Source: Macrostomum hystrix (lineage: Eukaryota; Animalia; Platyhelminthes). From it: a stretch of DNA of 64,000 nucleotides. A model generated the notes under the pieces. The model was not told where the DNA came from. It did not search any database and was given only the letters and a program-made list of their open reading frames with translations. Made by a program: the position numbers and the translations under genes. Positions 33,263 through 64,000 of this stretch are shown here, piece by piece. Numbering within the stretch: the stretch's first letter is position 1; each line of letters starts with the position of its first letter. The stretch covers positions 1 to 64,000 of the forward strand of contig CATNEN010000031.1 in the NCBI GenBank assembly GCA_950097015.1. Direction: 5' to 3'.

Positions 33263-33560
33263 CCCTAGAAGGCGCACCTTGCAGCTCATTTATAAATATT
33301 TTTGCCTGCCTGGAAATACCCATTTCGCCAAATAAAACCTAACAGCTAAATTTACCGAGTTGGGTTGATTAGAAAACATCCGAAAAAGTTATTAACTTTT
33401 CAAGTATGAAAATTTAGGCGCGTTTCAGGAAAATGTCCCCCTTTAATGTGCCCTGCAGGGGAACTAATGCCCCCCAGCAAGCAACTAATGGCCCCCCAAC
33501 AAGAAATAAATACCCCCTTTAGCAGCCAATCAATGTCCACACTTGTCAGAGACCCTCGAT
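33263..33560 (+). repeat. Left arm of 298-bp inverted repeat
   Basis: Reverse complement of 34904-35201 with only 2 mismatches seen (ggaAaatg vs ggaGaatg; agcCaatc vs agcAaatc). Confidence 0.97.
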
Positions 33561-33595
33561 AAATCATGCCATCGCGATGTTATATCATAATATCC

Positions 33596-34898: not shown

Positions 34899-34903
34899 GG
34901 TCG

Positions 34904-35201
34904 ATCGAGGGTCTCTGACAAGTGTGGACATTGATTTGCTGCTAAAGGGGGTATTTATTTCTTGTTGGGGGGCCATTAGTTGCTTGCTGGGGGGCATTAG
35001 TTCCCCTGCAGGGCACATTAAAGGGGGACATTCTCCTGAAACGCGCCTAAATTTTCATACTTGAAAAGTTAATAACTTTTTCGGATGTTTTCTAATCAAC
35101 CCAACTCGGTAAATTTAGCTGTTAGGTTTTATTTGGCGAAATGGGTATTTCCAGGCAGGCAAAAATATTTATAAATGAGCTGCAAGGTGCGCCTTCTAGG
35201 G
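34904..35201 (-). repeat. Right arm of 298-bp inverted repeat
   Basis: atcgagggtctctgac...gccttctaggg is the reverse complement of 33263-33560. Confidence 0.97.
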
Positions 35202-43400: not shown

Positions 43401-43631
43401 ACCCACAGTAAGAAATCCAACCCCCGCTAAAATGTTATTATTGTTATTATGTTATTAATGATCCCAGTCCCTCCTGTCCCAAACTGTACATTGATCTTTA
43501 TCTTTGTATCTTCCAATCTGCCCTGTACAAGAGACCCCAGCTTTTCGAAATAAAGTGGCAGTCACACATTGCTTAACTCGTTTCTTTTGGTTGCTAAAAC
43601 GAATTACTCCTTGTCAGCTCTACTACTTGTC

Positions 43632-45452: not shown

Positions 45453-45476
45453 TTCAAATGTTTCCATGTACGCGTT

Positions 45477-45548
45477 TTCATGGTCATGGTCATATCATGG
45501 TCATTTCATGGTCATTTCATGGTCATTTCATGGTCATTTCATGGTCAT
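45477..45548. repeat. 11-bp tandem repeat (tttcatggtca) in hAT 3' region
   Basis: About 6 copies of tttcatggtca and variants. Confidence 0.85.
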
Positions 45549-45924
45549 ATAGGGTGCAACATGTTGCAATTGTATTGCATTGCCAGCTTTTTGTCTGTAA
45601 TAATAATTTGTAACTGTATTAACTGTAATCTCACTTTTTAACTCCTCAAGTGTATCAAATGCATTAATTTTGCCCTTTTGTGTAATCCATATCACCTATT
45701 CATTTAAGAATAAAACAAAACAGTTGGCACATTCATTGCATGCATTGTAATAATCAAATATTTTTGATTATTTACAGTCTGGCCCGCGAGCCATTCCTAG
45801 ATATCTCAACTGGCCCTCACTCCAAAAAGTTTGCCCGCCCCTGCGCTACATGAACTGCCGCTGGGACTGATTGATTAAAGGGAAGCTTGAGGACTGTTGG
45901 ACTCTTTCATGGAGGGGAAGATTT

Positions 45925-46204
45925 TGTGTATTGCAAATGCATGCAACGCGCAGGGATAGTTCGGAGACAGGGTTTCTAGAAACTTCCACAGCAGGACTTG
46001 TTTACGCATATTTCCAGAAGTTTCCTCTCCCCGTCTTTCTAGAATCTAGAACCTTATTTCCCCGCGTGCATAAATATACGACCCGCCCTCCTATTGGCCC
46101 AGCTTTCCGCGCCACGCCACACAAGACTGTCTCTTCGTCTCGGTGTCAACTGAGAACCCGGATAATTATTTATTGTGTTTCTGTGTTAGTTCAACAACAG
46201 AACA
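45925..46204 (+). repeat. 3' LTR of Gypsy element (TG...CA, ~280 bp)
   Basis: Starts TGTG just after the purine tract 45911-45921, has a TATA-like cataaata at 46069-46076, and its R/U5 matches 39022-39139. The exact start is inferred. Confidence 0.75.
45973..46025. promoter_or_regulatory. Two perfect three-unit heat-shock elements (nTTCnnGAAnnTTCn) in LTR U3
   Basis: tTTCtaGAAacTTCc at 45973-45987 and tTTCcaGAAgtTTCc at 46011-46025, plus a partial TTCtaGAA at 46037-46044, all upstream of the TATA-like box. Confidence 0.65.
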
Positions 46205-47479
46205 ATTTTACTTTATATAATAAAGCACCTTTTCCCCTAATAGGGGGCATGGGATTAAGAAGAGAGACCTTGTTTCCTAATATCCAAATATACAGATAAA
46301 ATATTTGTTTATCAATACAGTTCAGAAATGCAGTTTATTGCATTATCAATATCTTCTGTTAGGAAAAATACCCAGAAGCAAATCTATAGACAATATAATG
46401 CACACAATTAGACTGGCGGTAGCTAGGTCAATGAATACTATTATTCACAGCCTGTTTCTGTTATTGATAAAGTTCATATAATTTAACGAGTCACGCTTAT
46501 TAAAAAACTAAGCTATGCAGCTTTGCTGTAAACTCAGAACAGTGCTGTAGTAGCAAATTATCAGTATACAAGCTAAAAAGCCAGTCCGTCTGTTAAAACA
46601 CTATTACACCCGTGTTACACTCCGTAAAGCCAAATCTGCGTTACAACACGAGCCTACAAAGCGGTACTCTGCGCGCAGCGGCGTATTGATACGCGCAGCT
46701 TATAGCTTTCAAAGCCAATACAACGCTTTTATGTGGGGCAAACGTCGAACGTGCTGCTATATATAAATACGTGCTGAAATATAAATATAAAGCATGCTGC
46801 TTATGCTGCTTAACAGGACAACTAATCTAACATAATGTATGTTTAGGCTAGTGAAAGCTTAAGCCAGTAATTATACAATTAGGCTATCGTATAATTGGAA
46901 TTGGCTGTTGCTAATTCTATTTTTAGTACTAGCACTAATAGTAGCTAGGCTGAGCTAGTTGAATATGACTATTCAAAAGGATATTAGACAATAGCAAAAA
47001 ATTATATATCATATATCGACTATAGCTTTAGGTATAGCTTGCTTATGTGCTTCTGTGTACTGTGTAGCCTAGCTAAAATATGTTTAGTGTATATATATAT
47101 ATAGGCCTATATATATATATATATAACTGCTATACAGCATTATAGCCTACTTCAAAACCACTTTCACAATTGATAATCATAGGCCTGACAAATATAACTA
47201 GATTCAATGCAAGTACACCAGTATTTAAATAAACTGACTAGTCTAAATGAAATTCTCTTGGTAGCTATTGATATGAAAAATGTTTTGATATACCTAAATA
47301 CCTAAAAATAGCTAAAGGTCCCTACCTATATAAATGTTCTTTTTATTGACTGACAAAATGTATATAATTATATTGATCTAGCTCCTGATCTATTATGTCT
47401 TGTAAATCTATTATGTCTACTAGCAAAATAAAAAGAAACATTATTGCCAGCTAGCTAGTTACTATCCTAAAGGCTTTCC

Positions 47480-50100
47480 TACTCTCCTCTAGCCTCCGCC
47501 CTCCTCAACCATCCTCTACCCTCCACTACTCTCCTCTATCTTCCCTGCCATCCTCTACCCTCCACTACCCTTCACTATCCTCCCCACCATCCTTTACCCT
47601 CCTTCACCATCCTCTACTCTCCTCTACACCCTTCCCTCTTCCCTCTACTCCTCTTCCCTTTACTACTATCCTCTACCCTCCTCTACTCTGCTCTAACCTC
47701 TTCTCTCCACTACCATCCTCTACCCTTCTCTACCCTCTTCTACCCTCCTATAACCTCCTCTAACCTCCTCTACCCTCCTTTACCCTGCTCTACCCTGCTC
47801 TACCCTCCTCTACCCTCCTCTAACCTCCTCTAACCTCCTCTACCCTCCTCTACCCTGCTCTACCCTGCTCTAACCTCCCCTACCATCCTCTACCCTGCTC
47901 TAACCTCCCCTACCATCCTCTACCCTGCTCTACCCTGCTCTACCCTCCTCTAACCTCCTCTACCCTCCTCTACCCTTCTCTACCCTCCTCTAACCTCCTC
48001 TAACCTCCTCTACCCTGCTCTACCCTCCTCTACCCTCCTCTAACCTCCTCTAACCTCCTCTACCCTGCTCTACCCTCCTCTACCCTCCTCTAACCTCCTC
48101 TAACCTCCTCTAACCTCCTCTACCCTCCTCTACCCTCCTCTACCCTGCTCTACCCTCCTCTACTCTCCACTACCATCCTCTACCCTTCTCTACCCTCCTC
48201 TACCCTCCTCTAACCTCAACCTCCTCTACCCTCCTCTAACCTCAACCTCCTCTACCCTCCTCTACCCTGCTCTACCCTCCTCTACTCTCCTCTATCCCCT
48301 TCCCTCCACTACCATCGACCATCGACCATCCTCTACCCTCCTCTACCCTCCTCTACCCTGCTCTACCCTCCTCTACTCTCCACTACCATCCTCTACCCTT
48401 CTCTACCCTCCTCTACCCTCCTCTAACCTCAACCTCTTCTACCCTCCTCTAACCTCAACCTCCTCTACCCTCCTCTACCCTGCTCTACCCTCCTCTACCC
48501 TCCTCTAACCTCCTCTAACCTCCTCTACCCTCCTCTACCCTGCTCTACCCTGCTCTACCCTCCTCTACCCTCCTCTAACCTCCTCTAACCTCCTCTACCC
48601 TCCTCTACCCTGCTCTACCCTGCTCTACCCTCCTCGAACCTCCTCTACCCTTCTCTACCCTCCTCTAACCTCCTCTAACCTCCTCTACCCTGCTCTACCC
48701 TCCTCTACCCTGCTCTAACCTCCTCTAACCTCCTCTACCCTGCTCTACCCTCCTCTACCCTCCTCTAACCTCCTCTAACCTCCTCTAACCTCCTCTACCC
48801 TGCTCTACCCTCCTCTACTCTCCTCTATCCCCTTCCCTCCACTACCATCGACCATCGACCATCCTCTACCCTCCTCTACCCTCCTCTACCCTGCTCTACC
48901 CTCCTCTACTCTCCACTACCATCCTCTACCCTTCTCTACCCTCCTCTACCCTCCTCTAACCTCAACCTCCTCTACCCTCCTCTAACCTCAACCTCCTCTA
49001 CCCTCCTCTACCCTGCTCTACCCTGCTCTACCCTCCTCTACTCTCCTCTACCCCCTTCCCTCCTCTTCCCTCCACTACCATCCTCTACCCTCCTCTACCC
49101 TCCTCTACCCTGCTCTACCCTCCTCTACTCTCCTCTACTCAACTCTACTCTACTCTATCTTTCCCTGCTCTTTCCTCCTCTACCCTCCTCTACTCTCCTC
49201 TACTCAACTCTACTCTACTATATCTTTCCCTGCTCTTTCCTCCTCTACCCTCCTCTACCCTTCTCTACCCTCCTCTACCCTCCTCTACCCTCCTCTACTG
49301 TCCTCTACCCCCTTCCCTCCTCTTCTCTCCACTACCATCGACCATCGACCCTCCTCTACCCTCCTCTACCCTGCTTTATCCTGCTCTACCCTCCTCTACT
49401 CTCCTCTACCCCCTTCCCTCCTCTACCCTCCTCTACCCTCCTCTATCTTCCCCGCCATCCTCTACCCTCCACTCCCCTTCTCTTTCCTACCCGCCATCCT
49501 CTACCCTCCACTCCCCTTCTCTATCCTCCCCAACATCCTCTACCCTCCTTCACCAGTCTTTACTCTCCTCTACCCCCTTCCCTCCTCAACCATTCTCTAC
49601 CCTGCTCTAACCTCGTCGATCCTCCCCACTATCCTCTACCCTCCGCTACCCTCCTCTATCTTCCCCGCCATCCTCTACCCTCCACCACCCTCCCTAGCCA
49701 TCCACTAATCTCCTCTACCCCCTTCCATCCTCTTCCCTCCACTACCATCAACCATCCTCTACCCTCCTCTACCCTGCTCTAACCTCCCCTACCATCCTCT
49801 ACCCTGCTCTAACCTCCCCTACCATCCTCTACCCTGCTCTAACCTCCCCTACCCTCCCCTACCCTGCTCTACCCTGCTCTACCCTCCTCTACCCTCCTCT
49901 ACCCTGCTCTAACCTCGTCGATCCTCCCCACCATCCTCTACCCTCCCCACTATCCTCTACCCTCCACCCTCTTCAACCATCCTCTACCCTCCGCTACCCT
50001 CCTCTACCCTCCCCACTATCCTCTACCCTCCACCATCCTCAACCTCCTCTAGCCTCTTTTAGCCTCCTCCACCCTGCTCTATCCTCCTCTATCCTCCTCT
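47480..50100. repeat. ~2.6-kb strand-asymmetric C/T-rich minisatellite of 10-bp units (cctctaccct / cctctaacct / gctctaccct)
   Basis: Near-pure 10-bp arrays in the core (~47740-49300) with degenerate flanks. An internal block (ctatccccttccctccactaccatcgaccatcgacc...) is duplicated ~533 bp apart (48291 and 48824). Confidence 0.95.
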
Positions 50101-50181
50101 TGCTAAGCTTGCTCTTCCTTTTATAAATCGACATTTTTCGCTGTTTAGTGTTTACTCATAAGGCATTATTTTTTTAGCAAT

Positions 50182-53100
50182 ATGCTGCGTGCAAAAGTTA
50201 CTGAGTTGCACTTTAAAGTAAGACACTACACACCTGGTCAGCGAGCTAGCAGGCGAAAGATAACGGTTGATGGTACTAGCTCTTTGTAAGTTCTGTGATT
50301 ACGGAAAGTGTACGTTGCGCGTAAATGTACAGAATTGTAAGTTTTTAGCGTATAAAAAACCTTCACAGACCGCCGCAACGACCACATGATCAAGAATCTG
50401 CCCCCAGTGCCGAAGAACACCTTTCATTCAGTTCTGCTTCACCACCCCTGTGTGGCAACACACAATATCAGGATCGTATCAATCGTGCTACCAAGGCATG
50501 GTCAGATAGCCAGCGCGATGCAGAGTCAGCAATCTGCGATTTTTTTAGCCCATTAGGCAACTGCGTAAAGTGTAAAACACATGAGGCGCCGTTTCGGTGC
50601 AGTGCATGCCACTTACTGCAAGTCTGCCGTAATTGCCTTGACGAACAACACAAACATCATCCTCCGCACGTGGCGGAACAGTGGAATGTAAGCTTTAAAG
50701 TTAGCTCATACTGCCATCAAACGTAGGCTAGAACACAGTAATTTACTTTCTTAATTCCCATTCATTTTACCACAAAGTAGGTGTACACCAAAACGAGTCA
50801 CTTCATTTCATGGCAGTGTGAACGAGCCTTTACAGTTTTGGCTTTCGGTGCACTTTGAATGATTTTTATGACATTTAAGATTAGTTTATCAATACACTAT
50901 ACTATTGTATTTTTTACAGTGTTTTCACTGTATCATTTGCATTTTTATTCTCAGAATTCAGAATTGTTTGTATTTTTTAATTTACTACTTCCAACAGGGT
51001 CATGTTTACGTTCCACTGACAGCTCCCGCTGTGCTGAAACGTCGATGCTCGTGCTTGGGATCATCGTTTGTCAAGCAAGTGTTTATTTTTGATGACAATG
51101 GTAAGTAAATGCCTATACGATTTTTATCACTATTTGTACAGGGCCAAATTACTTTTTTAAAACCTTTTAAAGCGGAAAACCTTCTTGCTTTCTTACCGAC
51201 ATGTGGGTTTGTAGTTTATAATGTCCGACTCAGGGCTTGAAGGTCGAGGTTCGATTCCTGATTTTACTGTAAACTTTTTGTCTATTAGCACAACACTTAA
51301 CTCTGCATTGCTTCAGTTCACCCAGCTGTTAAATGAGTGCTAGCATTGTCTGGGATTAATTTTGTGAATCTTCAAATGCGCTACGCAATGGCTGTGGCTG
51401 TGCTGTCGGCAGCTCACCCTTAGTTTCTAATCCTAGATCGTGCTGATATTGAGATACAACATATACACAACATACACTCGCTCCACCTCATACATCATAT
51501 ACATATACATTACGCTGAAATCCAATCAAATTTCATAACACAATTTCAGGCGACGAATTCGATGCTTCTTTAGAAGTATGTAATTGCAGCAACATCCGCG
51601 CATCACTGGTTCGCCATGGATTCTGGCCGCTGCAAGCTGAACCAGATCTGGCGATTCGCGTTACTGCTGCCTCTTTCAAGCTCCTTTTACAGCTTATCGC
51701 TATCAACAAAAAGTGTGCAGGCTCCCTACAAAGTGCTTGTTGTGCCATGGCATCTTTCAGATCGCCTATGTGGGGCCGACAAGGGGTACGATGAAGTAAT
51801 TTTTTTGTCTACATGCACGTTAAGTCAGGAAGTTTTGGTACCTGTATACTCTTGGAGCCAAATTTATTTGGTGACAGAATTCAATGCAAAATGTTTTGAT
51901 GCTTGATGTTTTTATAGGTAGTATATGAGGGGGTGAGTGGCAGAGCGGTTAACGCGTTTGCCTCTCGCACCACGGTCCCTGAGCTCGATTCCGCGAGCAA
52001 GGCCACATTAATTTGAGGTGCAGCCGCGGAGAGAAGGCTTGGGGGCTTGTCGTGCAATTTACGCCCATGAGGGCCAACCTCCAACGCACAGAGAAAATGT
52101 ACACCGCCTGACGATGAAAAAGTCAGGGCAGATGTACACCTCTGTGTGAGTGTGTGCCTGCGTACGGTATCTGTGTGCGTGTGTGCTCAGGAGTCAGCGG
52201 AATGGGCAGAATTGCCTCCTCGCTGGCTGCAGGTCTACTGTCAAAAAAATGTTGTGTCAGTGCCCACAGCCCTCCTGCTAACATTATTATTATTACAGGT
52301 AGTATATGTTATCAAGCTTTTTTATTTCAGATGAATCTATACCGGCCGCTGAATACTTTCGGCTCAATGACTGCTTTTCGCCAGCTTTTGAGTTCAATTC
52401 AATGGGATGGAGAGACCAATTGTCCAGCTTGCTATACGGTTTAAGTCGAAGAATTAGCATTTTTCCTTCTCTTATATCTAATAATGGGTATTGTAAATAT
52501 TCACTTGTCCCACTGTGCGAAATGTAATTTATAGGAGCCTCAAAATTTCGTCAAGTTTTGCCCCACTTTCTCCAAACAGTGCTCCAACGTGTATTGTATT
52601 GCTTTTTTAGTCAAAATAATTTTTTTAACCATTCCTAATCTCTGTTTAGTCCGAATGCCAAGATACCTTGTCGGCTCCATTGATTGTTCAGCTCGACGGC
52701 TGCTTCGGAATGCGGCACAGAGCCTCTGCCGGCCTTTCATCTTTTCCTGAGCACGACACCAATAGCTACTTTGTGGAAGCAGACATGTCCGGTGACTTTC
52801 AAGTCAATGCTCAGAGTTGTCCTAATTGGAAAGCAGGTGAAAGAGGTCAGCAGCTCGTCACGACAAGAGACAAAACAAATTTGGATGTCTTTGGCCTGTT
52901 TGCTGCATCTTGCCGCCACGAGTCAATATTAACGCTTTCGGATATGATTACAAGTGGAGAACGGTAATGTGATTAAGAGTTTAGTTTTAGTTAGGAATTT
53001 TCATTTTTCTTTTTTTCTGATCATTGGCAGAGTGGTAATGCATCCTAACGGCTAGTCATGAGCCGCTACAAGGCAAAGCCACATTAAGTTTGGGGTTGGT

Positions 53101-54933
53101 CGCAGAAACTTTAAACTTAATGTACTATGCACTGGACTTACTTGCTAGCCAATCCGAACTACTCCATCTTAGACTCAACTACGCTGTGGCATCAGTGAAG
53201 ACAGCTGTGGCACGCAACCCAGCGGCTCGCATTATTGTCTCATATGACATTGCATGCAAGCTGAAAGCTACATTTCGGGATTCTCAAATTGCTTTCGTAG
53301 TGCCTGCAATGCATGCCTACGGACATTCATGGCCGTGCCAGCTAACAAACGGCGTACGCTTCAAACCGGATGTCGGTCTTACAGACGGCGAAGGTTGCGA
53401 ACGACTGTGGAGCTATTTACGGCGTTTTTCCGCACAAACGAAAGAGATGACTCACGTCAATAGACGTCGATTTTTAAACACTTTAGCTGCTGACATGAAC
53501 TTCGAATTAATCGTCAACATCAGTAAGGCAATACCAGCTACTTGTAGTTTATAAATGAACCGGAAATGCTTTTGCGGGAAGTTTTGCATCTTGTGCTTCT
53601 TGACCTCTTTCTCTTGCGCTCATGCTAATAAGTTATCAAAGTCAGCTAATACTGTACACGTGAAAGTTTTATCCCAATTAGTAACTTAACAACCATCCCA
53701 TCCGATGCCTAAATTCGTGTAGCTAACTGGCTGACGCAGCGCATCAAATACGTCCAGCGGACCAATGCACGCATCGAAAATGAGATAACTGCATTTGCTT
53801 CGAGCCATCAAATCTCACGTATGAACTCGTCAGATAAACTTTGCACAAAAGCAAAAAATTTTAATTTAGTACAGCATGCTTTGCACTCGATTAAATGTAG
53901 CCTCTTTTTACTCTTGCTTTTCCGCAATAATTTTTCGTTACTTTTTTCAGCGACGCTTTCTGCTTTTGAGGCGTACGTGGAATCTTGGGCGCCAGACTTT
54001 TGTGCATCCATCATGGCAACATCTAATCAAAGACGGGTGAGCACTACTCGTGAGTTAGCTATCAACGATCTAGCTGCACTAACCGCAGAGCGGGAATATC
54101 TGGCCCAGCATGTCGCTACCGATCGGGGTCAGAAAATGGCAAAACGCTTGGCGTCGGCTAAGAAAGCAATCGATAAAAAACGCGAGATCATAGTTCGTCG
54201 CTTCAACTCTAGCCTATCTTCTGAGCCTCCACTTAGTCTAGAAGATTTTACGAGCTTTGCAGCTGAAGGCTTTAAAACAGCTAATCTTAGCCAATTGGAC
54301 GCAAATACAACGTCGCAGATGGTTGCCTATCGTCTATATCATATGCGCCTTCGAGCTAAAGAGGAGATAGCCATTGTGGAGTGTGAAGTTCGACGCTCCA
54401 CCCGCTTTCTACTTCGGGCCATTCAGCAAACCTGGGCGCGCATTGCCTCAAGTCATTATAACTCTCCTGTGCTTTACAATCGGCTCATCGGTCTCAGTCG
54501 ACTTCTTCATCGGCATGTCACCGCCTTTCCATCAGAAAAAACCCTGGTTCAAGACACCAACATACTGGCGATGGAGACAGTCGGCTCTGTGGCTCTTGAC
54601 GAAGAAACGTGTGACGTTTACTCTATGAGTGACTCCGGTAAGTAAAAATTGCCAATTTTTAAAAACGATTCGGCGACCATGTCCATGTTATGGTATGATA
54701 GTTTCAGAATGTTGTAAAGATTGAAAGTGTTTGTATCTCATCATCTTTAGACTAGATTATTTCGGGCTCACTTTATTATGCTTTTGTTGCCCACACAGGC
54801 AACAAATTGTCGAATATGCGCGCGTGATTCGTCGCTCGTACTGCTTTACATTGTGCTATAAATAGCTTTTCGTACTATTATTTCATTCCTTCCTGTTCTT
54901 TCAGCATCGGATGATGACACAGACACTGAATGA
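50182..54933 (+). CDS. CxC-cluster + KDZ (Kyakuja-Dileera-Zisupton) transposase, 9 exons, 749 aa: 50182-50285, 50369-50687, 50998-51100, 51550-51785, 52331-52438, 52650-52963, 53173-53522, 53951-54637, 54905-54933
   Basis: All 8 introns are GT-AG with matching phases (2,0,1,0,0,2,1,1), total 2250 nt with no internal stop. Motifs: CVKC..FRCSAC..CRNC...H..PPH.AEQW, LVRHGFWP, CPAC, QLDGCFG, GLFAASCRH, GER|LNY, SYDIAC, VPAMHAYGH..PCQ, GLTDGEGCERLWSYL. Confidence 0.85.
51205..51355 (+). mobile_element. tRNA-derived SINE fragment in KDZ intron 3
   Basis: Degenerate tRNA head with B-box ggttcgattcc (51248-51258), followed by a cttaactctgcattgcttcagttcacccagctgttaaatgagt body typical of invertebrate SINE2 families. 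Confidence 0.6.
51928..52296 (+). mobile_element. Full-length tRNA-derived SINE (369 bp) with 12-bp TSD, in KDZ intron 4
   Basis: A-box tggcagagcgg (51938-51948), B-box-like gagctcgattcc (51981-51992) and a (tta)n tail. The exact direct repeat aggtagtatatg lies at 51916-51927 and 52297-52308. Confidence 0.85.
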
Positions 54934-56733
54934 ATTCAGTTCTCTTAATGCACTGCGTTGTCGGGTCTGCACTTCTTTTTCTCTGACTTACTTGTGAATG
55001 ACATGTGCTCTGGATTCCCAGACCAGTTTAACTTACACATGTATGTGCTAAGAAAACGCGTACGTACGAGCTAGCGATAGGCAGCAAAAATGTTCAGAGC
55101 AGCAGTGTGGCTGTGGCTGTAGGTTATCTGTGGCACTTACAAGCGCAGTTGATTAAAGTCACGTTACTTGCACAGGATAAGCTATAATCTTATGCTCAGA
55201 AATTCTTTTTAATGCTGTTCTTGTTTAGTAATGTACATGCAGTTCACTTATGTATTTGCAAATCAGTCAAGCTTATTGTACTTCAGGTTCTTGTATCTTC
55301 TCGTATAACTTCTCGTATCTCCCTACTTATATTTGTGTTGTTTCTGAACGTACTTCTAGCTATTTTTTAATTGTATAATAGACTAAATTCGAGGCATTAT
55401 ATAAATACCATAGAAACAAGCGTAGCTTAACGTAGCAAGTAATTGTTACATTTATACCGGTTCCGTCCTGTGCCCAACTAAATTCTCGTAATTGTTCCTT
55501 ACGCCCCTTACATTGCATGCCTATGATTGTTTGAATGGTTTCTCTGATCCATAATATATAGAAAGGATAGTTACCCAGTTTTTGTTACAAATTGAGTTCA
55601 GTTGATCTAGAACCTACCGTGATCGCTGATGTCTTAGAGAGCTTGTGGAAAGACGACAAGTTTTGATGAGAATCAAAGCTATGTTCATTATTTATTAAAT
55701 CTAAGGCTCATGGTAAGTCAAAAATATCTCTCCATTTTTGTTACTTCAATCATGAATGTATATTGGATTGCTTTCCTTGCTGCGATTTTTTTAAGGAAAC
55801 GGTTAAAAGCCAAATAAATTGTATATCTGATTGTGTGTTTAACGGAAATTAATTAACGGCGAATAAAATTTTAGGTCTGTATAAAGTTTTATTCATCCGA
55901 TTTCTTTCTTTTTTTCGGTTCTAGAACGTGCCAATTATACCAGAAGGACTACGAGCGTAAGCTTAAATTATGAATCGTTGGTTGATTCGTCCAATTATAA
56001 ATTGTACTTGATGATTGGAACCACATTTCAATCAGGTAAAAGTACTTACAAATTAATATTTTGGTATCGCAATAACCCAAAAAAATGCTAACTCCCAGAG
56101 GATGTAGTCCAAGCAGCAGAAATGCATGGCACGAACAACCGATAGGACGAGGCCGGACAGTTAAAGCGAACATTTATTTGGCGCTAAAATAACCAGCGGC
56201 ACCAGTTTTAGAAATGCAGACTCGAAAAGCAACACGCAGCAGAAGGTGTCAAAAAGCGCGCTGGCACACAGGCTGAAAGCCCTCTTAAATACTGACAGCG
56301 CGGGGGAGAGGCTGAAGCCCCGCAGATTCGCATCAAACTAACAGACATAGGTGCACATGCTCCAAGGTCAAGCGAGACAGGCAGACAGTTACCTGTTATC
56401 TGCCTCACGATGACTTAAACTGAGTCATCGTGCGTGTACGCAATTAAATTAAAATGCTCGTATTAGTGTGCTTGGGCATCGTGACAAGCGTGAATGCCCA
56501 GGGCACATTATAAGAGCGTAGACATGTCAAAGTGATTTTTAACTTACTTTGTCGAAATTATTCACTTCGGCTCACGCAATTTCAACGATTGGCCCGCCAT
56601 CGTCAGCATATCGTTCACCCTTACGCCACCCAAAAAACATTTTGTTAAGAATTTGCCATATACATATGTACGAAGCTTTTTACCACTTCACTTAACTCAC
56701 TTACTCAGAGTCATCCTACATGTATTGTATTTT

Positions 56734-58316
56734 TCGCACTATGTGGAACAGTGGGCATGCAAAACGGAACGGCCCATGGAATTCTATGGCCGAGCGTAAT
56801 TGAACTCACAAAAGAAAGTAAGCCATAGACAACTCATGCAATTGATGCAAGACAATTTGTCATGCTATGTGGAACGATGAGCCAGAATAGAAGGAACGAT
56901 TTTAGATTTTATTTGCAGAAAGAATGAAATTAAGCAGAAACAGAACATTTTTCAGAGTTGCATTCCAATAAATCATATTTTAAGTCTGCAATTGAAACAT
57001 CAAAGTTAAAAAATTTCAACCCCTAAAACAGATGTCGCCTCAAACCCAATCCAAACAATCGATTGCAGCGCAGCTCCCAGCCAGCGCACTTGTCCGCAGT
57101 GATTGCTTGACCAACAGCTTCAGTCGCCTCTCGTTCAAGTAGCATGAATCTCCACTGCTTAAGTGTCACTCCTTCTGTTCAAACTTGCTCATTCTCAACC
57201 ATGCCGGCTTCCGCCAAACGGTTCTTGAGATTTGACTTCAACGCAGCAAATTCGGTCGGGTTTAGAAATGGTGAATACGGGGGTAGGATTCGTGTCACAA
57301 TTCTGTCCCGATGGTTCTCTCGGATCTCCACACCACGATGAAAATTTGGGCCATCCTTAAAAATTACCCAGTTTCCGGTAGGGTCCAGTTGATGGCAGCG
57401 GTCTGCTAGGTGGTCTAAAAATTCTTGAAACCTTTGCTGCGTTTGGCCCCTCTCTGGATGACATAATGCACCAACCGGAACTCCGACGAAATTGCCATGC
57501 AAACCGTAACGTTAGGACCCCTCTGGGTTGTCACCGTGCCGAATCCTTGCGAACACTTGGTGTCCACGAGCCGACCTGCCCTACGACCTCCGGGTCCACA
57601 AGTTAAAACCGGTCTCATCTAAGTAGACAGTGTGAACTCCTGGAGCTAAGTGGAGCATGAAGTTAGCGTATTCGCTTCTGGCGTCCAGGCTTTCGACTCG
57701 GTTGGTGTTTAGGTGAATATATCCGTCCCCTTGGTAGCAAGTTTGACCGTAAAGAGCAAACCATCCATTGTTCGATCAATTGTTTTAAGGCTCACCTGTG
57801 GCTTGTCAGGAAAGCGTCCGATCAGCTTCTCAGCCATTGACTTTAGCGTTTGAAAGGGATTTCGCTGCACCTCATGTTGTAAAAAATCTCGCATCTTTGC
57901 GTCCATTTTGCAGTTTGCTTCCTTGCATCCTCCACGAGGCAAAGCTTCCAACCTGCCATGCAGCTTGTTCGAATGTTGACCGAATACGCTGAACAGAAGT
58001 TTTGGATACTCCTAACAAGACTGACACATCCTTCATCGACAGTCCACGGTGCAAGGCGGCGACGATGCGCTGTACGTCGATCACGTACAGCAATTTGGGG
58101 CGCCATTATTGCTTAACTGATCAAACGAAAGAAAATGAAAGCGTGTTCTTGTCTCTGAAAAACTAAAATCGTTCCTTCTATTCTGGCTCATCGTTCCACA
58201 TAGCATGACAAATTGAGTTGTCTATGGCTTCTTTCTCGTGTGAATTCAAACGCTTGGCCATAGAATTCCATCATGGGCCGTTCCGTTTTGCATGTCCACT
58301 GTTCCACATAGCGCGA
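56734..58316 (-). mobile_element. IS630/Tc1-mariner superfamily (Gambol-like) element with ~154-172 bp TIRs, IR/DR type
   Basis: Left TIR 56734-56905 and right TIR 58163-58316 are reverse complements (the left has an 18-bp insert). ctatgtggaac is repeated at the outer and inner end of each TIR. The exact termini and TSD are unclear. Confidence 0.88.
57179..58106 (-). pseudogene. IS630-like DDE transposase, frameshifted
   Basis: HTH-like DVQRIVAALHRGLSMKDVSVLLGVSKTSVQRI, TLKSMAEKL..VSLKTIDR, YLDETGFNLWTRR..GRS, NVTVCMAIS, D..NFH and LPPYSPFLNPTE. There are several frameshifts and stops. Confidence 0.88.
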
Positions 58317-58325
58317 CAAAAGCAA

Positions 58326-58510
58326 TACTTGCATCCCAGCTGTATTGAATACACTCGCAGTCATCCTACATGTACTTGCATCCCAGCTGTATTGAATACA
58401 CTCGCAGTCATCCTACATGTACTTGCATCCCAGCTGTATAGAATACACTCGCAGTCATCCTACATGTACTTGCATCCCAGCTGTATTGAATACACTCGCA
58501 GTCATCCTAC
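58326..58510. repeat. 47-bp tandem repeat x~4
   Basis: tacttgcatcccagctgtattgaatacactcgcagtcatcctacatg at 58326, 58373, 58420 and 58467. Confidence 0.95.
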
Positions 58511-59510
58511 TTACATCGGAGTCAATCCAGTGCTCGATATACAAGTCACGCGTTTTGAGTTGAATATGGAGTGTAAGTTTAATTTTAGTTTTTTAGACTA
58601 AGCAAAATTTTACGTTTTTTATGGTCTCAAACGACACTGACAACGGCCGGAGTTTGTCCGCTCGCAAGCTGTCTGCTGTGGCGCCCCATTCGACGCGAGC
58701 CTTAATTGATGCCCATTTTTTGTTACCATGCAGTGGGCTACGTAGCGTTTGTTATTATATACCATGTTATTAAGGCCAAGCTTTAAACGGGTGCCAGCGT
58801 AATTGAGGCTGCGCGTGGCCCCGCCCCAGTCCATGGACTGAATAGTCATACCCAGCCTGCGGAGGCACAGCGCAAAATAGCTGCGGCTGTGCTGTCTTCT
58901 GTAAATCTGCCCCAATTGGGGCACGTGCAGTTAATTATTTTATGAATATTACTCCGCAGGATATTCCATACACCATGAAAATGGTTTATGGCTGCATTTT
59001 TTAATTTCCCATTACAACAATTGTCATACATGTAGAACCTCGCCACACTTTCCGTAAGAAGACATAGTAAGTGCTTAGCAAAGAAAAAAGTACCTAGCTA
59101 AATCTAGCGACTTGATTAAGCAAAGTAAAAAAGCCAAGAAAATCCAGGAAAACTGAGAGTACACTTTCAGCCTTTACGAGTAACAACTCACATGAGTGAA
59201 GTCAAACTTTTGGCTGCCAATCACGTATACTTAAATTCCTCTCAAATCTTATTTAATTAGCAAGCTGTATGTTGTCAAGTGGTCATTGATAAAGTCCTTT
59301 TGCCTTGATTGCGCCTGATCAACTCAGTATAAAATTACCATCATGGCCTTTTGCCACTCAAGCACTTCGAAAGGTGAGGGGAGCAGTGCTTACATTCATG
59401 ATAAGCATGTGATAAATGCTGTAGAGCGGGCTAACTTTATTCTGGTTTCTACCTCGTTTTAGTCCAGCTCCCCACTTGTTCTCGTCATCCTGCATTAAAA
59501 ATACGCACCG

Positions 59511-59616
59511 CTAAATGCAACACTATCTAAATGCAACACTACCTAAATGCAACACTATCTAAATGCAACACTACCTAAATGCAACACTATCTAAATGCAA
59601 CATTATCTAAATGCAA
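59511..59616. repeat. 16-bp tandem repeat x6.6 (ctaaatgcaacacta[t/c])
   Basis: Units start at 59511, 59527, 59543, 59559, 59575, 59591 and 59607. The last base alternates t,c,t,c,t. Confidence 0.95.
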
Positions 59617-59908
59617 TCCTGAATTTTAGATGCTCGGTGTTTCTATCGTGGGAAGTTGTACAACTACGAATAAGAACTAAAACAGTGGCTAGAAAGACCT
59701 TAGCGTAAACTACGACCGATTTTATGTTCACAATCTTTAACTGATATGAGCCAGAAAAGAAGACGGTTGCTAAGAGGTGTCTATTCGAAAAACTTTTGTC
59801 GCTACTGAGTCAGAGGAACGAAAGAAAACGCGAATGCCAGACGACCCGGCAACTGTACTCTGGACTAACGAGAAAGGAGGTGAAGGATCGGAGTTAGTGA
59901 TAATGGTT

Positions 59909-60478
59909 CCAGATGTCGAGCGCACCGACGCAGCAGCACCAGATGTCGTGCGCACCGAGGCAGCAGCACCAGATGTCGAGCGCACCGAGGCAGCAGCACC
60001 AGATGTCGTGCGCACCGAGGCAGCAGCACCAGATGTCGACCGCACCGACGCAGCAGCACCAGATGTCGTGCGCACCGAGGCAGCAGCACCAGATGTCGAG
60101 CGCACCGAGGCAGCAGCACCAGATGTCGTGCGCACCGAGGCAGCAGCACCAGATGTCGAGCGCACCGACGCAGCAGCACCAGATGTCGAGCGCACCGACG
60201 CAGCAGCACCAGATGTCGAGCGCACCGACGCAGCAGCACCAGATGTCGAGCGCACCGACGCAGCAGCACCAGATGTCGAGCGCACCGACGCAGCAGCACC
60301 AGATGTCGAGCGCACCGACGCAGCAGCACCAGATGTCGTGCGCACCGAGGCAGCAGCACCAGATGTCGAGCGCACCGACGCAGCAGCACCAGATGTCGAG
60401 CGCACCGACGCAGCAGCACCAGATGTCGTGCGCACCAAGGCAGCAGCACCAGATGTCGTGCGCACCGAGGCAGCAGCA
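59909..60478. repeat. 30-bp minisatellite x19 (ccagatgtcg[a/t]gcgcaccga[c/g]gcagcagca)
   Basis: Exact 30-bp periodicity with variation almost confined to two positions. It explains the four long repeat ORFs. Confidence 0.97.
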
Positions 60479-60639
60479 CCAGAATCGGAAGCGGTCTCGG
60501 AAGATGAGCGCTCAAAGGTGGCTTGATTGGTGCTATCGTATTCGACAAAACCCGAAAAAAACGCCAGCCACGGATGACCTAAAAGGAGTTTAGTGAGTTC
60601 ATGAGTACTTAGCTTAAAAATAGGGAAGTGGGAAGTGCA

Positions 60640-60845
60640 GTTGACGCATTGGACGGTCGGAGGCACACTGTGAGTGTACAAGCGTCGACGAGCTGCCTGA
60701 GGATGAAGTCAGGGCAGAGTTTACATACAGAGTACAAGAGTACACACACAGACACACACACACACACACACTTTCTAGTGAGTATGCGCGTGTCTGTTCA
60801 GGGGTCAGCGAAATTGGCAGAATTGCCTTTTTGCAGGCTGCTAAT
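60640..60845 (+). mobile_element. Degenerate SINE copy related to 51928-52296, with internal (CA)n
   Basis: ctgaggatgaagtcagggcaga and ttcaggggtcagcgaaattggcagaattgcc..ggctgc resemble ctgacgatgaaaaagtcagggcaga and ctcaggagtcagcggaatgggcagaattgcc..ggctgc. Confidence 0.6.
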
Positions 60846-60896
60846 CCAAGCACAACGAACTTAAAAAAAATATGTAAAAAATATGGTATAACAAAC

Positions 60897-63298
60897 CCAG
60901 ACTCATGATCCAGATTTCGATTAAACGATCCGGTTGAAACAGAGGAGCTGCTCCTGGGATTGAACTGTAGCTCGTCTCTGACGCGCCAGACTTTGAGAAG
61001 CTGCTCCTTTGACATCGAATTGACTGGAATATTCGGTGGAACGCCTAGAGGCCATGAGGACCAAAATCCCTGGGCTGGATATTTTACGTAGTTCAGACGA
61101 CGGCCGCCGCCTGACTGCTCTAAAAGCATTACAGGATTGTGCTCATACAAGTTAATTATAATAATCTGAAAGTAGTAACATAATTTGGATAGATGGACAT
61201 ACACAATCGAGGACTACATTACATTCTACATTCTGAAATACGTTTAACGGAATGATATACAATGATATACGATTATGCAGAATAGTCGCACTTACTATAC
61301 TTAAGCTGTAGCATGGAAGCGCATGAAGAGCGCAACTCTTCGATTGTCATGTCATCGGTAGAACCGCTGCTGCGAAAGAACGCATACTAAAAAGAGACAA
61401 AACGTTGAATAACGATTTAACTCGCGTTCAACTTGGTATTCGCATGTGGACTAAAGCGCTAGAAGTTACTTACTGAAGCGAAATTCGTCCGCTCTGCGGC
61501 TCCACTAACATCAGGGGTTTCAAGAATGACTAGTTTGCGGTCTGGCAGACGAATTACACAAGAGGCACTGCCTCCGATTTTTGCCAACTGGGTAACCTAG
61601 TTGAAAATTAAAGGTATGCGAGATATCACAAAATAGGTATATATCTCGTATACGCTCGTATATGTAATTGGTCAGTGCTCAGTGACTAACCAAAGATTCG
61701 AACTTGCGCTTCAGCTTTATGGACTCCACTTTCTTTCCTGCTTGGTTCTCAGCATTCGCTCTCTCAGCAGCTAGCTTAAGACGCTCCAGCTCTTCAGGAG
61801 GCAGGTTTGCAAATATTTGGCTTAAGTTCTGCGAATTAGCTACAATTGGTGGAAAATTGAATATACGCTTTTGTAGTAATGCAAGGTGCAGCAGGAAATG
61901 TGCGGTGGTGCAAGTTGCGGTGAAGCAAGATACGATGGTGCAAGGTTAGGTGAGGCAAGGTGTGGTGGAGCAAGCTGCGGTGGGGCAAGGTGCAGCTGGA
62001 AAGGTGCGTGTGTTGCGTACGTGCAAGTGTTGACTTACATTTAGCATAAAATTCAAGGAGGAAGAATATTGGTAAAATTCAGGTAGTGTAGCTCGCTTTA
62101 GGAACAATAGATAAATGAAGGTAAGAATCAGCATAATATGTTATTGCCGATGCATGTTGTCCACAATGGTAATCTTCAGAACTCAATAATTTATTAAACA
62201 AAAAACGACACAAGAAAAGAAATATATTCATAAATATATTATATTGATTTGAACATATATATATTATTACGGTTGACGAGAGAATAAAAGTACAAGACTA
62301 TGTGCTAAATTTTGGGTGTAAAGGCATGGTACGCGTCAAGTCAGTCCAGTCCAGTTTTGAGCAAGCAAACTAAAAAAGTTGAAGCTGACGGCTAGCACCC
62401 CGCATGGTGAGCTGATTGTTAAGAGTAGGTTTTTGGGCCTTAATGTACATAGCCTCTAATAGGCGAAGTTTGTAATCGTTCTTACAAAACCTTATAGTCT
62501 TAATAATTTCATGTGGTTCAGCGTCACAGCATCTCTTGCGTGGGAGCAGATGTTCATTAATGGCAGAGTTCTTAAGCCAGTGTTCTCTAACCCTCGTGTA
62601 CAGGTTTCGCTTAGTCTTTCCTATATAGGAAATGTTCCGGTCACCAGAACAATAAAATTTGTACACAACACCAGCTGCAGCAAGAGGTCGAGGCACACTA
62701 TATCTCAGATTGCTCACAAACATAGCGATCTTTTCGGTGCGAAAAACAAGACGAATTTGAGCATTGAGATTTTTTTCGGAATAACTTTCTGATCTTTTTA
62801 AACTCAACAGAGCACAATCCAAGAAAGGTAACGAAATAATATGATTCTTAGGCTCAAAAGCTTGCAAACTCTGCGGGTCATCCAGCTTTTCACACAGAAA
62901 CTTGTTAATACTCGTAATTCTAGACAGGAAGGTTCTCAGGTAGCCGATAAGACCAAATAAACGTGTCAGATGTTCAATCTCATTGTGGAACAGCTCCCAC
63001 GAACTGCAGATGAAAAAGGCCCGATGAAGAAAACAACGAACAAGACCAATTTTTCCATTGCTTTGGGCAAAGGGCATCAAACCTAAGCAGGGAAGCAAGC
63101 CTTCATAAAATCAATCTAATATACTTCTGAACAATTTCCTATCATTTTTTCGTTTTGGTTTAATAAATTATGGCAAAAAATAATATATTGACTCTTACCT
63201 AAATTTAAATATTGTTAAAAACTTACAACTCAAGTCACTTCGTCCTTTTTGTTGTTCCATACAGAACACATTCCAAGAAGAAAGCTTTCTCAACATGC
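60897..63298 (-). CDS. Multi-exon gene with divergent HMG-box-like domain; supported exons 63298-63227, 61839-61691, 61596-61474, 61386-61296, 61119-~60897 (5' and 3' ends unresolved)
   Basis: GT-AG junctions with consistent phases (1,1,0,0,1) give one open frame: MLRKLSSWNVFCMEQQKGRSDLS|SNSQNLSQIFANLPPEELERLKLAAERAN..KLKRKFESL|VTQLAKIGGSASCVIRLP..|YAFFR..EELRSSCASMLQLKY|KQSGG..NYVKYPAQGFWSSWPLGVPPNIPVNSMSKEQLLKVW. The first two exons together match the HMG-box pattern (K.S.WN.F..E / S..F..L.PEE..R....AE). Confidence 0.68.
61901..61990. repeat. Degenerate 15-bp repeat x6 (tgcggtgg.gcaag.)
   Basis: Units start at 61901, 61916, 61931, 61946, 61961 and 61976. They read LAPPx pentapeptides on the minus strand and lie in the predicted HMG-gene intron. 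Confidence 0.75.
62135..63095 (-). mobile_element. 5'-truncated Penelope-like retroelement (RT C-terminus + GIY-YIG endonuclease) in an intron of the HMG-like gene
   Basis: GLVRCFLHRA..CSSWELFHNEI, GVVYKFYC...SYIGKTKRNLYTRVREH and LRLLEAMYIKAQKPTLNNQ (ORF 62370-63098). There is a frameshift at the 5' end, and the 3' boundary is approximate. Confidence 0.9.
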
Positions 63299-63399
63299 CT
63301 GCAATTTGAAGATAGGCATATCATTATTTAGAAAAAAACATTGACAATTTAAAAACGCAATCAATAAACGACAAACAAGACGAGAAAAAGAAAATTCAA

Positions 63400-63770
63400 T
63401 ACAAAAAAGAAATAGGAAAACTAGGGTAATATTAAGAATACCATAATTAAGGGCAGAAAGGGGATAAAAAGGAAAAAGAAGGACAACTGGGAAACTGGGA
63501 AGCAGGGAAAGGGAAAGAAGAGGACGAATAGGAAAAATACGAAATAAGGAGCAGGACAAAGGGGATATAAGGAGACAAGAAGGGGGTGGAAAGGAGGGAC
63601 TTGAATACAAAGAAGGGGAGGAAAGGGGATTGGAAAAGAGGAAGAAAAAGGAAAGAAGGCGAAGGGAGGGGATTGGAAAAAAAGGGAGGAAAAGGAATGG
63701 AAAAGAGGACACAAAGGGGGTTAGAAAGGAGAAAAGGATTGGGAAGGAATGGAATAGTAAAAATGAGCAA
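63400..63770. repeat. Purine-rich (G/A) low-complexity tract
   Basis: Almost exclusively A/G on + (ggaaaaagaaggacaactggga...gaaaggagaaaaggattggg). The F/P/S/L-rich and K/R/E/G-rich ORFs here are compositional artefacts. Confidence 0.9.
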
Positions 63771-64000
63771 AACTTATTCTATATGGCTAAGATAAGATTA
63801 GCTACTACTAGCTATTGGCTATTGCTAGATCAGGATCAAGAACCGTCTTTGCAACCTTCCTAATCTAGTAGTGGGGTCGGGATCGGAGCAGGAGCATGGA
63901 TACCCGAAATAATCTTACTGCATGGTGTGCAGTGAGATTGAACGCGAAGTAAGGAATCGTAGAGCAATCAAGAGGAGGCTGAAAAAGGCAAAATTAACGA

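What the first reader, a model, noticed from the sequence alone, without database searches (positions are those of the whole stretch)
50182..63298. Convergent KDZ transposase + divergent HMG-box gene: candidate large, intron-rich two-gene KDZ element (or domesticated pair) in an animal
Seen: a fully open spliced KDZ transposase on + faces a spliced HMG-box-like gene on -. The spacer between them is largely secondary insertions (IS630-like element, minisatellites, SINE). Established: fungal KDZ-class transposons are linked to TET/JBP genes and to genes for divergent HMG-domain proteins. Inference: this is a metazoan KDZ element longer than 13 kb carrying an HMG accessory gene without a recognisable TET/JBP, or a co-domesticated pair. 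Neither gene can be reconstructed from the single-ORF track alone.
Basis: partly seen in the sequence, partly recalled or inferred. Interest (0 to 1): 0.85.

Follow-up and report, generated by a model that had tools for sequence, protein, structure and literature searches.

The report
Flatworm KDZ transposase with companion gene
A Macrostomum-type flatworm locus holds an intact, intron-rich KDZ cut-and-paste transposase gene facing a second, expressed and conserved gene of unknown fold; it is probably one more copy of a two-gene jumping element already seen in this genome, and the claimed HMG box could not be confirmed.

Summary
Ten GT-AG coding exons (50182-54933, +) give an open 781-aa protein. 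It carries the Pfam KDZ domain, aligns end to end with Macrostomum KDZ proteins, and diverges less in exons than in introns from a related copy.

The facing gene (63298-59770, -) is real. RNA contigs from three runs confirm four of its five introns. One contig carries the Macrostomum spliced leader joined at 63299/63298. Against a diverged copy, exons 2-5 give pN/pS of about 0.18.

Three points of the finding do not hold or stay open:
- The Penelope-bearing intron 1, which would assemble the "HMG box", is retained in the only contig that spans it.
- Pfam finds no HMG box (no family at E<=10), and no homologue of the companion gene was found.
- The 30-bp minisatellite is not spacer. It lies in the companion's last exon, and in the RNA frame it encodes a decapeptide-repeat tail. 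The window has one extra T there.

No termini, TIRs or TSD are visible in the window, so transposon versus domesticated pair is unsettled here.

The scan already reported complete two-gene KDZ transposons on other DNA of this genome. This is most likely an older, insertion-riddled copy of a known kind.

The parts
50182..54933 (+). KDZ transposase gene. Ten coding exons: 50182-50285, 50369-50687, 50998-51100, 51550-51785, 52331-52438, 52650-52963, 53173-53522, 53723-53818, 53951-54637, 54905-54933. Product 781 aa. If the last intron is not used, the ORF ends at 54645.
   Evidence: Pfam KDZ. tblastn exon cores. All nine introns are GT..AG. 47% identity over 631 aa to M. lignano P0002 and 43% over 711 aa to P0004. 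The motifs LDGCFG (305), SYDIACK (418) and TDGEGCERLW (465) are conserved.
50170..50181 (+). Pyrimidine run plus AG (50176-50177), 4 nt before the KDZ ATG. Candidate spliced-leader acceptor; inferred only.
   Evidence: Sequence read. Same layout as the proven acceptor of the companion gene. No reads were laid here.
59770..63298 (-). Companion gene. Exons: 63298-63227 (ATG at 63296), 61839-61691, 61596-61474, 61386-61296, 61119-60897, 60578-59770. As written in the window it gives 233 aa, with the stop at 60535-60533. In the RNA frame it gives 487 aa, with the stop at 59772-59770.
   Evidence: Joints in RNA contigs. Model translated. 14 synonymous against 8 non-synonymous changes versus the X3 copy, pN/pS 0.18. 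Exon 1 and its joint to exon 2 are inferred.
63299..63300 (-). AG acceptor for spliced-leader trans-splicing of the companion mRNA.
   Evidence: X9 contig 12 carries 23 non-genomic letters beyond 63299. Together with g63299 they match the last 24 nt of the 35-nt M. lignano SL exactly (PMC8629364).
61840..63226 (-). Proposed intron 1 (GTAAGT..TTGTAG) holding the Penelope fragment. It is retained in the assembled RNA contig.
   Evidence: X9 record 12 is colinear from 63299 to 61687. X3 divergence is 16 in 95 nt just upstream of 61840, against 4 in 149 nt inside exon 2, which supports a coding boundary at 61839.
62051..63171 (-). 5'-truncated Penelope-like retroelement fragment (ORF 63110-62373) in the same orientation as the gene. 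Secondary insertion.
   Evidence: Atlas scores of 0.95-0.96 to clusters with HTH_animal, GIY-YIG and RVT_1. The related X3 copy leaves colinearity exactly at 62051. The upstream limit is approximate.
60555..60561 (-). T7 run in the last companion exon. All three RNA sources have one T fewer, which shifts the window's own frame.
   Evidence: read-laying table 4: one letter left out at 60555 (X7, X9) and at 60558 (X3). Sequence.
59909..60483 (-). 30-bp minisatellite, 19 copies. In the RNA frame it encodes an (SGAAASVR[ST]T)n tail.
   Evidence: TRF. ORF 59770-60681. Contigs run from 60578 past 60484 into the array. All three frames are open, so the frame rests on the RNA T-count.
56719..58331 (-). 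Decayed Tc1/IS630-like DNA transposon with roughly 190-bp TIRs, inserted into the 47-bp minisatellite.
   Evidence: Inverted repeats I1 and I2. 82% over 195 nt. DDE_3 at 5.3e-09. Flanks match the minisatellite unit.
58326..58510 (.). 47-bp minisatellite in the true intergenic spacer (54934-59769).
   Evidence: TRF.
52174..52230 (+). 57-bp SINE-like core in KDZ intron 4. A second copy lies at 60785-60841 in companion intron 5.
   Evidence: blastn, 82% over 57 nt.
47499..50100 (+). 2.6-kb (CCCTCCTCTA)n array directly upstream of the KDZ gene. A shorter C/T-rich tract (63400-63790, read on the minus strand) lies upstream of the companion gene. They might be degenerate inverted arms; this is not shown.
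   Evidence: TRF. Sequence. No significant inverted match between the two sides.

Best explanation
This is a copy of a large two-gene DNA transposon of the KDZ (Kyakuja-Dileera-Zisupton) superfamily in a Macrostomum flatworm. Its ends are not visible in the window.

The plus-strand gene encodes a complete 781-aa transposase. It has an N-terminal cysteine cluster and a KDZ catalytic core with the conserved motifs LDGCFG, SYDIAC and TDGEGCERLW. By analogy with other KDZ elements, this enzyme would bind the element's ends and cut and paste it (inferred).

The minus-strand gene converges on it. It encodes a protein that the host processes like its own mRNAs, by spliced-leader trans-splicing and four confirmed cis-introns. 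The protein has a small, charged N-terminal part predicted from its sequence to be helical, a conserved middle part, and a Ser/Ala/Gly decapeptide-repeat tail encoded by a minisatellite. I infer that it is an accessory factor for the transposase, for DNA binding or bending, nuclear import or regulation, as in PIF/Harbinger or MuDR.

This particular copy is old. It has since taken up a Tc1-like element, a Penelope fragment and SINE pieces, and as assembled it carries a +1 T in the companion's last exon.

Shown: gene structures, expression of the companion, selection on both coding sequences, and the secondary insertions. Inferred: that the two genes belong to one mobile unit, what the companion does, and that exon 1 joins exon 2.
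For: KDZ domain and full-length colinearity with relatives.

Intron positions are shared with the M. lignano gene in L001 (compared with the exon table).

Against the unspliced related copy L002, exon divergence is 3.0% and non-exon divergence 7.6%, and all 22 indel columns fall outside exons.

RNA runs hold 0.10-0.64 of the KDZ words.

For the companion: four spliced joints in three runs, and an SL match of 24 in 24 nt. pN/pS is 0.18 in the predicted frame. Divergence steps up at the predicted exon-2 acceptor.

The related X3 copy lacks the Penelope insertion at 62051, so that insertion came later.

KDZ loci in M. lignano behave as large mobile units. L004 and L005 share at least 23 kb at 99.6-99.9%, with a sharp left end (CATCAGTG...) and unrelated flanks.

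Earlier scan notes report complete two-gene KDZ elements with TIRs and a 7-bp TSD elsewhere in this genome. I did not check them.
Against: No TIR, TSD or terminus is visible. The right end, if any, lies beyond 64000.

I could not show a second copy of this pair, nor any homologue of the companion gene.

The three M. lignano KDZ loci examined show no detectable companion within 10 kb.

Both ORFs have stayed open and constrained while several TEs landed around them, which also fits host genes.

X1 (organism A) holds KDZ words, but no companion contig was laid from it.
Confidence: 0.55

Rival explanations
1. Co-domesticated pair. Both genes are now host genes derived from an immobilised KDZ element. 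They are kept by selection and expressed through the host's trans-splicing machinery, and the element's ends have been lost.
For: Both coding sequences are under purifying selection. The KDZ ORF is intact and the companion is readily assembled in small RNA runs, despite at least four later TE insertions in introns and spacer. The companion is SL trans-spliced. No TIRs are found in the window. The related copies (L002 at 94%, X3 at about 90-95%) could be orthologues in sister species.
Against: Purifying selection between copies is also expected for active transposon lineages. Earlier notes describe young complete elements of the same layout in this genome. The window's own companion sequence is frameshifted relative to the RNA. 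SL trans-splicing affects 20-30% of Macrostomum genes and says little on its own (PMC8629364, PMC10468722).
Confidence: 0.2
2. Chance neighbours. A KDZ transposase gene (mobile or domesticated) lies next to an unrelated, lineage-specific host gene that merely converges on it.
For: There is no detectable homology of the companion to anything near other KDZ genes. There is no domain link: no HMG and no other family. 4.8 kb of unrelated DNA separates the two 3' ends.
Against: Earlier first-stage notes list at least six other loci in this genome where a KDZ gene faces a gene described in the same way, with a small N-terminal head and a repeat tail. They are unchecked and come from the same kind of reader. 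Both genes are found together in RNA of organisms B and C and in the wastewater samples.
Confidence: 0.15
3. The companion's productive mRNA is not the exon1-exon2 form. The gene may use another start, or be non-coding at its 5' end, so there is no 'HMG' head at all.
For: In X9, the only contig across the region keeps all 1,387 nt between 63226 and 61840. The X3 copy, which lacks the Penelope, still carries at least 316 nt upstream of exon 2. Pfam sees no domain in exons 1+2.
Against: The exon-2 frame has no ATG before exon 4. The SL acceptor sits 2 nt before an ATG, whose 23-codon ORF ends at a consensus GTAAGT in the phase that continues exon 2. Contigs drop minor isoforms. Conservation begins at the predicted acceptor.
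Confidence: 0.1

Closest known systems
Macrostomum lignano hypothetical protein BOX15_Mlig024767g1 (P0002; NIVC01000166) and BOX15_Mlig019149g2 (P0008)
   Same: KDZ domain. 47% identity over 631 aa for P0002 and 33% over 752 aa for P0008. Same N-terminal Cys cluster. Intron positions of P0002 are shared. The P0008 locus exists as two copies of at least 23 kb with a sharp common left end.
   Different: These are different families, at no more than 47% identity. No companion homologue is detectable within 10 kb. Downstream of P0002 lies a Gypsy-type retroelement.
Zisupton-type animal KDZ transposases (e.g. Xiphophorus maculatus LOC111609322, Betta, Branchiostoma, Halichondria)
   Same: Nearest relatives outside flatworms, at 25-32% identity over 480-600 aa. 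They share the LDxxFG / YDIAC / TDGExxERLWS motifs. Zisupton is the one KDZ lineage that was well characterised early on as a TIR/TSD transposon, with 8-bp TSDs (PMC12730594).
   Different: Those proteins score for Pfam CxC1/CxC2; the window's pieces do not at E<=1. No termini or TSD are known for this locus. From my own recollection, unchecked here, fish Zisupton is described with a SWIM finger and a Ulp1 protease rather than a separate companion gene.
Fungal Kyakuja/Dileera/Zisupton elements carrying TET/JBP genes (Iyer et al. 2014; PMC12730594)
   Same: Same transposase superfamily. They are multi-gene elements in which the transposase travels with a second gene. Kyakuja makes 7-bp TSDs with CA..TG ends (PMC12730594), the TSD length that earlier notes report for this genome.
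   Different: No TET/JBP is found here. The link of fungal KDZ elements to divergent HMG-domain genes is my recollection of Iyer et al. 2014, which the paper tools do not hold. HMG identity was tested here and not met.
Two-gene cut-and-paste transposons with an accessory protein (PIF/Harbinger with its Myb/SANT protein; MuDR mudrA/mudrB)
   Same: A transposase plus a second, separately transcribed protein. MuDR also has a convergent layout. The Harbinger two-protein layout is cited in PMC12730594.
   Different: These are unrelated superfamilies. The role of the companion here is wholly inferred.

Membership tests
KDZ transposase (Pfam PF18758) | Significant match to the KDZ profile over its full length | tested here: met
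   Profile positions 3-98 match at 2.5e-11 and positions 101-217 at 1e-27, on two adjacent exons. Both are above the gathering score.
KDZ transposase (Pfam PF18758) | Conserved acidic-residue motifs of the catalytic core present and ORF uninterrupted | tested here: met
   LDGCFG, SYDIACK and TDGEGCERLW align with all four flatworm relatives and with the fish proteins. The 781-aa product has no stop. Which residues are catalytic is taken from the literature, not tested.
KDZ transposase (Pfam PF18758) | N-terminal CxC cysteine clusters (Pfam CxC1/CxC2) | tested here: inconclusive
   No CxC family at E<=1 on the exon pieces; only zf-B_box at 0.027. The cysteines do align with relatives that carry CxC1/CxC2.
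KDZ-class DNA transposon (mobile element) | Defined termini (TIRs or CA..TG ends) flanked by a 7-8-bp TSD | tested here: not met
   No inverted match between 44000-50400 and 63200-64000. The right end may lie beyond the window, so this is absence within the window only.
KDZ-class DNA transposon (mobile element) | Multiple copies at unrelated sites sharing both genes | not testable with these tools
   There is no search of this genome. Only L002 (94%, KDZ part) and the X3/X7 RNA copies are seen. Earlier notes claim several such elements.
HMG-box protein | Match to an HMG-box sequence profile | tested here: not met
   hmmscan of exons 1+2 (73 aa) against Pfam gave no family at E<=10. Exon 2 alone gave none. 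phmmer against the PDB gave none. The Atlas gave no HMG cluster.
HMG-box protein | L-shaped three-helix fold | not testable with these tools
Spliced-leader trans-spliced Macrostomum mRNA | The SL sequence joined to the transcript at a genomic AG | tested here: met
   24 of 24 nt of the SL 3' end are joined at AG 63300-63299, in one X9 contig. The SL sequence is from PMC8629364.
Tc1/mariner-IS630 element | DDE_3 transposase remnant between TIRs | tested here: met
   DDE_3 at 5.3e-09. Arms of about 190 bp at 82% identity. The ORF is broken into several frames.
Penelope-like retroelement | RT C-terminal part followed by a GIY-YIG nuclease | tested here: inconclusive
   Pfam found no family. The Atlas scored 0.95-0.96, with 184-200 shared features, to clusters carrying HTH_animal, GIY-YIG and RVT_1. 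The GIY..YIG motif is visible in the translation.

The most novel reading that the evidence does not exclude
Animal KDZ transposons of this flatworm lineage are obligate two-gene elements. Their second gene encodes a new, fast-evolving DNA-architectural factor: an HMG-like head too diverged for profiles, plus a minisatellite-encoded repeat tail. Both genes have adapted to the host by placing a spliced-leader acceptor directly before the start codon.
Probability: 0.2. Interest if true: 0.55.

Novelty: new member of a known kind. Interest (0 to 1): 0.35.

Why it matters
KDZ elements are well described in fungi and fish but hardly at all in flatworms; a search of the held literature found no paper pairing Zisupton with flatworm terms.

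This locus gives a full exon model of an intact flatworm KDZ transposase. It also gives direct RNA evidence that the gene facing it is spliced, spliced-leader trans-spliced and under purifying selection.

If the pairing holds across copies, the companion would be a candidate accessory factor for KDZ transposition in animals. It would also be an example of a transposon gene that uses host trans-splicing and a coding minisatellite.

On its own the locus adds little beyond the complete copies already noted in this genome.

Tried and rejected
1. Companion homologues. Two searches of the 5.8-billion-protein set found nothing: the exon-5 region, and the last exon with its tail. The length windows were 110-348 and 172-546 aa.
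2. tblastn of the spliced companion model against the M. lignano KDZ loci L001, L004 and L005 gave nothing at E<=1. The 21-bp repeat downstream of P0002 belongs to a Gypsy-type pol ORF, not to a companion.
3. Two exact-pattern scans of metagenome contigs found no match: the exon4/5 junction and a conserved KDZ 29-mer.
4. Look-ups of the Penelope ORF and of P0003, P0005, P0006 and P0007 for genomic context were not on record.
I did not resend it anywhere.
6. TIR search between the two flanks returned only chance-level short matches.
7. The Atlas on exon 5 gave weak SAP-like leads (score 0.58), too low to use.
8. The right end of the M. lignano P0008 element runs into an assembly gap, so no TSD could be read.
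9. Iyer et al. 2014 is not held, so the 'fungal KDZ linked to divergent HMG' premise rests on memory.
10. The search of earlier findings by sequence was blank.


Full report
**Organism and setting**

The window is from a Macrostomum-type flatworm. An RNA contig laid on the locus carries, beyond the genomic AG at 63300-63299, letters that match the 3' end of the 35-nt Macrostomum lignano spliced leader 24 out of 24 (SL sequence in PMC8629364). That leader is highly conserved in the genus (PMC10468722). The closest named proteins are also M. lignano hypothetical proteins.

Left of the finding the window holds:
- an 84-copy 319-bp satellite at 1-26566;
- a TE-rich stretch;
- a 2.6-kb (CCCTCCTCTA)n array at 47499-50100.

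**KDZ gene (plus strand)**

Pfam KDZ (PF18758) is split across two open pieces: 52650-52964 (2.5e-11, profile 3-98) and 53039-53551 (1e-27, profile 101-217).

A phmmer scan of 1.84 billion representatives with the second piece gave 1609 hits. The best full-length ones were P0002 (630 aa, 61% in the core), P0003, P0004 and P0008. tblastn of these four onto the window recovers seven colinear exon cores between 50382 and 54576.

I enumerated frame-keeping GT..AG pairs and corrected the exon-3 acceptor against the alignment. This gives ten coding exons, listed under parts, and a 781-aa product without stops. Its alignments are:
- 47% over 631 aa to M. lignano P0002;
- 43% over 711 aa, including the whole C-terminal region, to P0004, which sits on an intron-less 2.9-kb RNA contig;
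- 25-32% to fish, amphioxus and sponge proteins that carry CxC1, CxC2 and KDZ.

The motifs LDGCFG, SYDIACK and TDGEGCERLW are conserved throughout. Exon ends fall at the same protein positions as in the M. lignano gene of L001, so the intron-rich structure is old in this family.

A related unspliced copy, L002 from a Logan run, is colinear with 52475-54177 at 93.8%. Exons differ at 3.0% and the rest at 7.6%, and all 22 indel columns fall outside exons. That indicates purifying selection.

Expression of the KDZ gene is only indirectly supported: RNA runs hold 0.10-0.64 of its sampled words. A pyrimidine run plus AG four bases before the ATG looks like an SL acceptor but is untested.

**Companion gene (minus strand)**

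Reading the minus strand gives six exons with consensus splice sites. Contigs of three runs were laid on 60484-64000. They confirm four joints exactly: 61691|61596 (X3, X9) and 61474|61386, 61296|61119, 60897|60578 (X3, X7 and X9). All are CT..AC on the plus strand, which is GT..AG for this gene.

X9 is identical to the window (1 other letter in 2,071). X7 is near-identical. X3, a wastewater metatranscriptome, is a diverged copy.

The listed X3 differences in exons 2-5 amount to 14 synonymous and 8 non-synonymous changes, giving pN/pS of about 0.18. Most replacements fall in the Ser-rich end of exon 5. X3 divergence jumps from 4 in 149 nt within exon 2 to 16 in 95 nt immediately upstream of the predicted acceptor at 61840. 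So exons 2-5 encode a protein under selection in the predicted frame, and exon 2 begins where predicted.

**What is not shown for the companion**

The X9 contig that carries the SL runs colinear from 63299 to 61687. It therefore keeps the whole proposed intron 1 (63226-61840) with its Penelope fragment. The X3 copy, which lacks the Penelope because it leaves colinearity at 62051, still carries at least 316 nt upstream of exon 2.

The exon1-exon2 joint thus rests on sequence logic only:
- the SL acceptor lies 2 nt before an ATG;
- a 23-codon ORF ends at GTAAGT in phase 1;
- the TTGTAG acceptor continues the frame;
- there is no other in-frame ATG before exon 4.

Contigs drop minor isoforms, so this is not a refutation.

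**The HMG claim**

The 73 residues of exons 1+2 hit no Pfam family at E<=10. Exon 2 alone hits nothing relevant in Pfam, the PDB or the ESM Atlas.

By eye, the start (KLSSWNVFCMEQ...) resembles HMG helix 1, and "LPPEELERLKLAAERA" resembles helix 3, with a much shorter helix 2. That is a resemblance, not a test. The label is therefore unsupported but not excluded.

**The tail**

Exon 6 starts at 60578 and runs into the 30-bp minisatellite at 59909-60483.

All three RNA sources have one T fewer than the window in the T-run 60555-60561. With the RNA count, the frame continues through 19 decapeptide repeats (SGAAASVR[ST]T) to a stop at 59772-59770, giving 487 aa. With the window's seven Ts, it stops at 60535-60533, giving 233 aa. 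X9 is otherwise identical to the window, so an assembly homopolymer error or an allelic difference is likely.

The minisatellite is thus part of the gene, not spacer. The lead for this came from earlier notes on repeat tails in sister loci.

**Spacer and insertions**

The true spacer is 54934-59769. It holds a decayed Tc1/IS630-like element at 56719-58331, with roughly 190-bp TIRs and a DDE_3 remnant, inserted into a 47-bp minisatellite.

The Penelope fragment scores 0.95-0.96 in the Atlas to HTH_animal/GIY-YIG/RVT clusters. A 57-bp SINE-like core lies in one intron of each gene.

**Is it one mobile element?**

Inside the window there is no TIR or TSD, and the right end would lie beyond 64000. 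Both genes are preceded by C/T-rich tracts on their own strands, which might be degenerate inverted arms, but the sequences do not match.

I could find no homologue of the companion anywhere, nor near three M. lignano KDZ genes.

There is indirect support:
- M. lignano holds two copies of at least 23 kb of another KDZ locus at 99.6-99.9%, with a sharp common left end and unrelated flanks.
- Both genes' relatives occur together in RNA of organisms B and C and in wastewater samples.
- The scan has already reported, on other DNA of this genome, complete two-gene KDZ transposons with TIRs and a 7-bp TSD, two of them followed up. Those notes are unchecked by me.

**Verdict**

The most likely reading (0.55) is an old, insertion-laden copy of that two-gene KDZ family, with the transposase intact and the companion still expressed. 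A domesticated pair (0.2) and chance adjacency (0.15) remain open.

The kind is known: the KDZ superfamily, nearest to Zisupton-type animal proteins. What this locus adds is the RNA-backed structure, the SL trans-splicing, the selection on the companion, and the coding minisatellite tail.

Noticed in passing
window 1-26566: A 319-bp satellite in about 84 tandem copies (89% matches) fills the first 26.5 kb of the window.
   Followed up: no
window 26857-28386 (-): An intact 509-aa ORF with DUF3504 (1.6e-18) and a QRICH1-like domain (below the gathering score). From my own recollection, this pair occurs in Crypton-type tyrosine-recombinase genes and their domesticated derivatives. It lies apart from the Crypton noted at 33263-35201.
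   Followed up: partly
window 30315-31148 (+): An open piece with a galactosyltransferase domain (PF01762, 2.8e-35). Probably an exon of a host gene.
   Followed up: no
window 43569-44780 (+): A 403-aa ORF with a Spin-doc-type zinc finger and a weak DUF4371 match (below the gathering score). From recollection, this combination is typical of hAT-like transposases.
   Followed up: no
window 60555-60561: The assembly has seven Ts where RNA contigs of three runs have six, including one contig otherwise identical to the window. Possible homopolymer error in the assembly.
   Followed up: partly
runs X3-X6 (wastewater metatranscriptomes): Diverged copies (about 90-95%) of both genes and of the Penelope element occur in wastewater metatranscriptomes. 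A Macrostomum-like flatworm therefore seems to live in those plants.
   Followed up: no
L004:5002-28258 and L005:5004-27841 (M. lignano NIVC01000126 / NIVC01000227): Two copies of at least 23 kb of a KDZ locus (P0008) at 99.6-99.9%. They share a sharp left end (CATCAGTGTCAC...) next to unrelated flanks, and contain kilobase inverted arms filled with short tandem repeats. The right end falls in an assembly gap.
   Followed up: partly
L001:18801-24397 (-): A Gypsy-type retroelement whose 1,284-aa pol ORF ends in an (NQVQSSE)n repeat encoded by a 21-bp minisatellite. This is another coding minisatellite tail in a Macrostomum mobile element.
   Followed up: no
window 63932-64000: An RNA contig of run X7 covers the last 69 bases and runs beyond the window's end, so something is transcribed just to the right of the companion's upstream region.
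   Followed up: no
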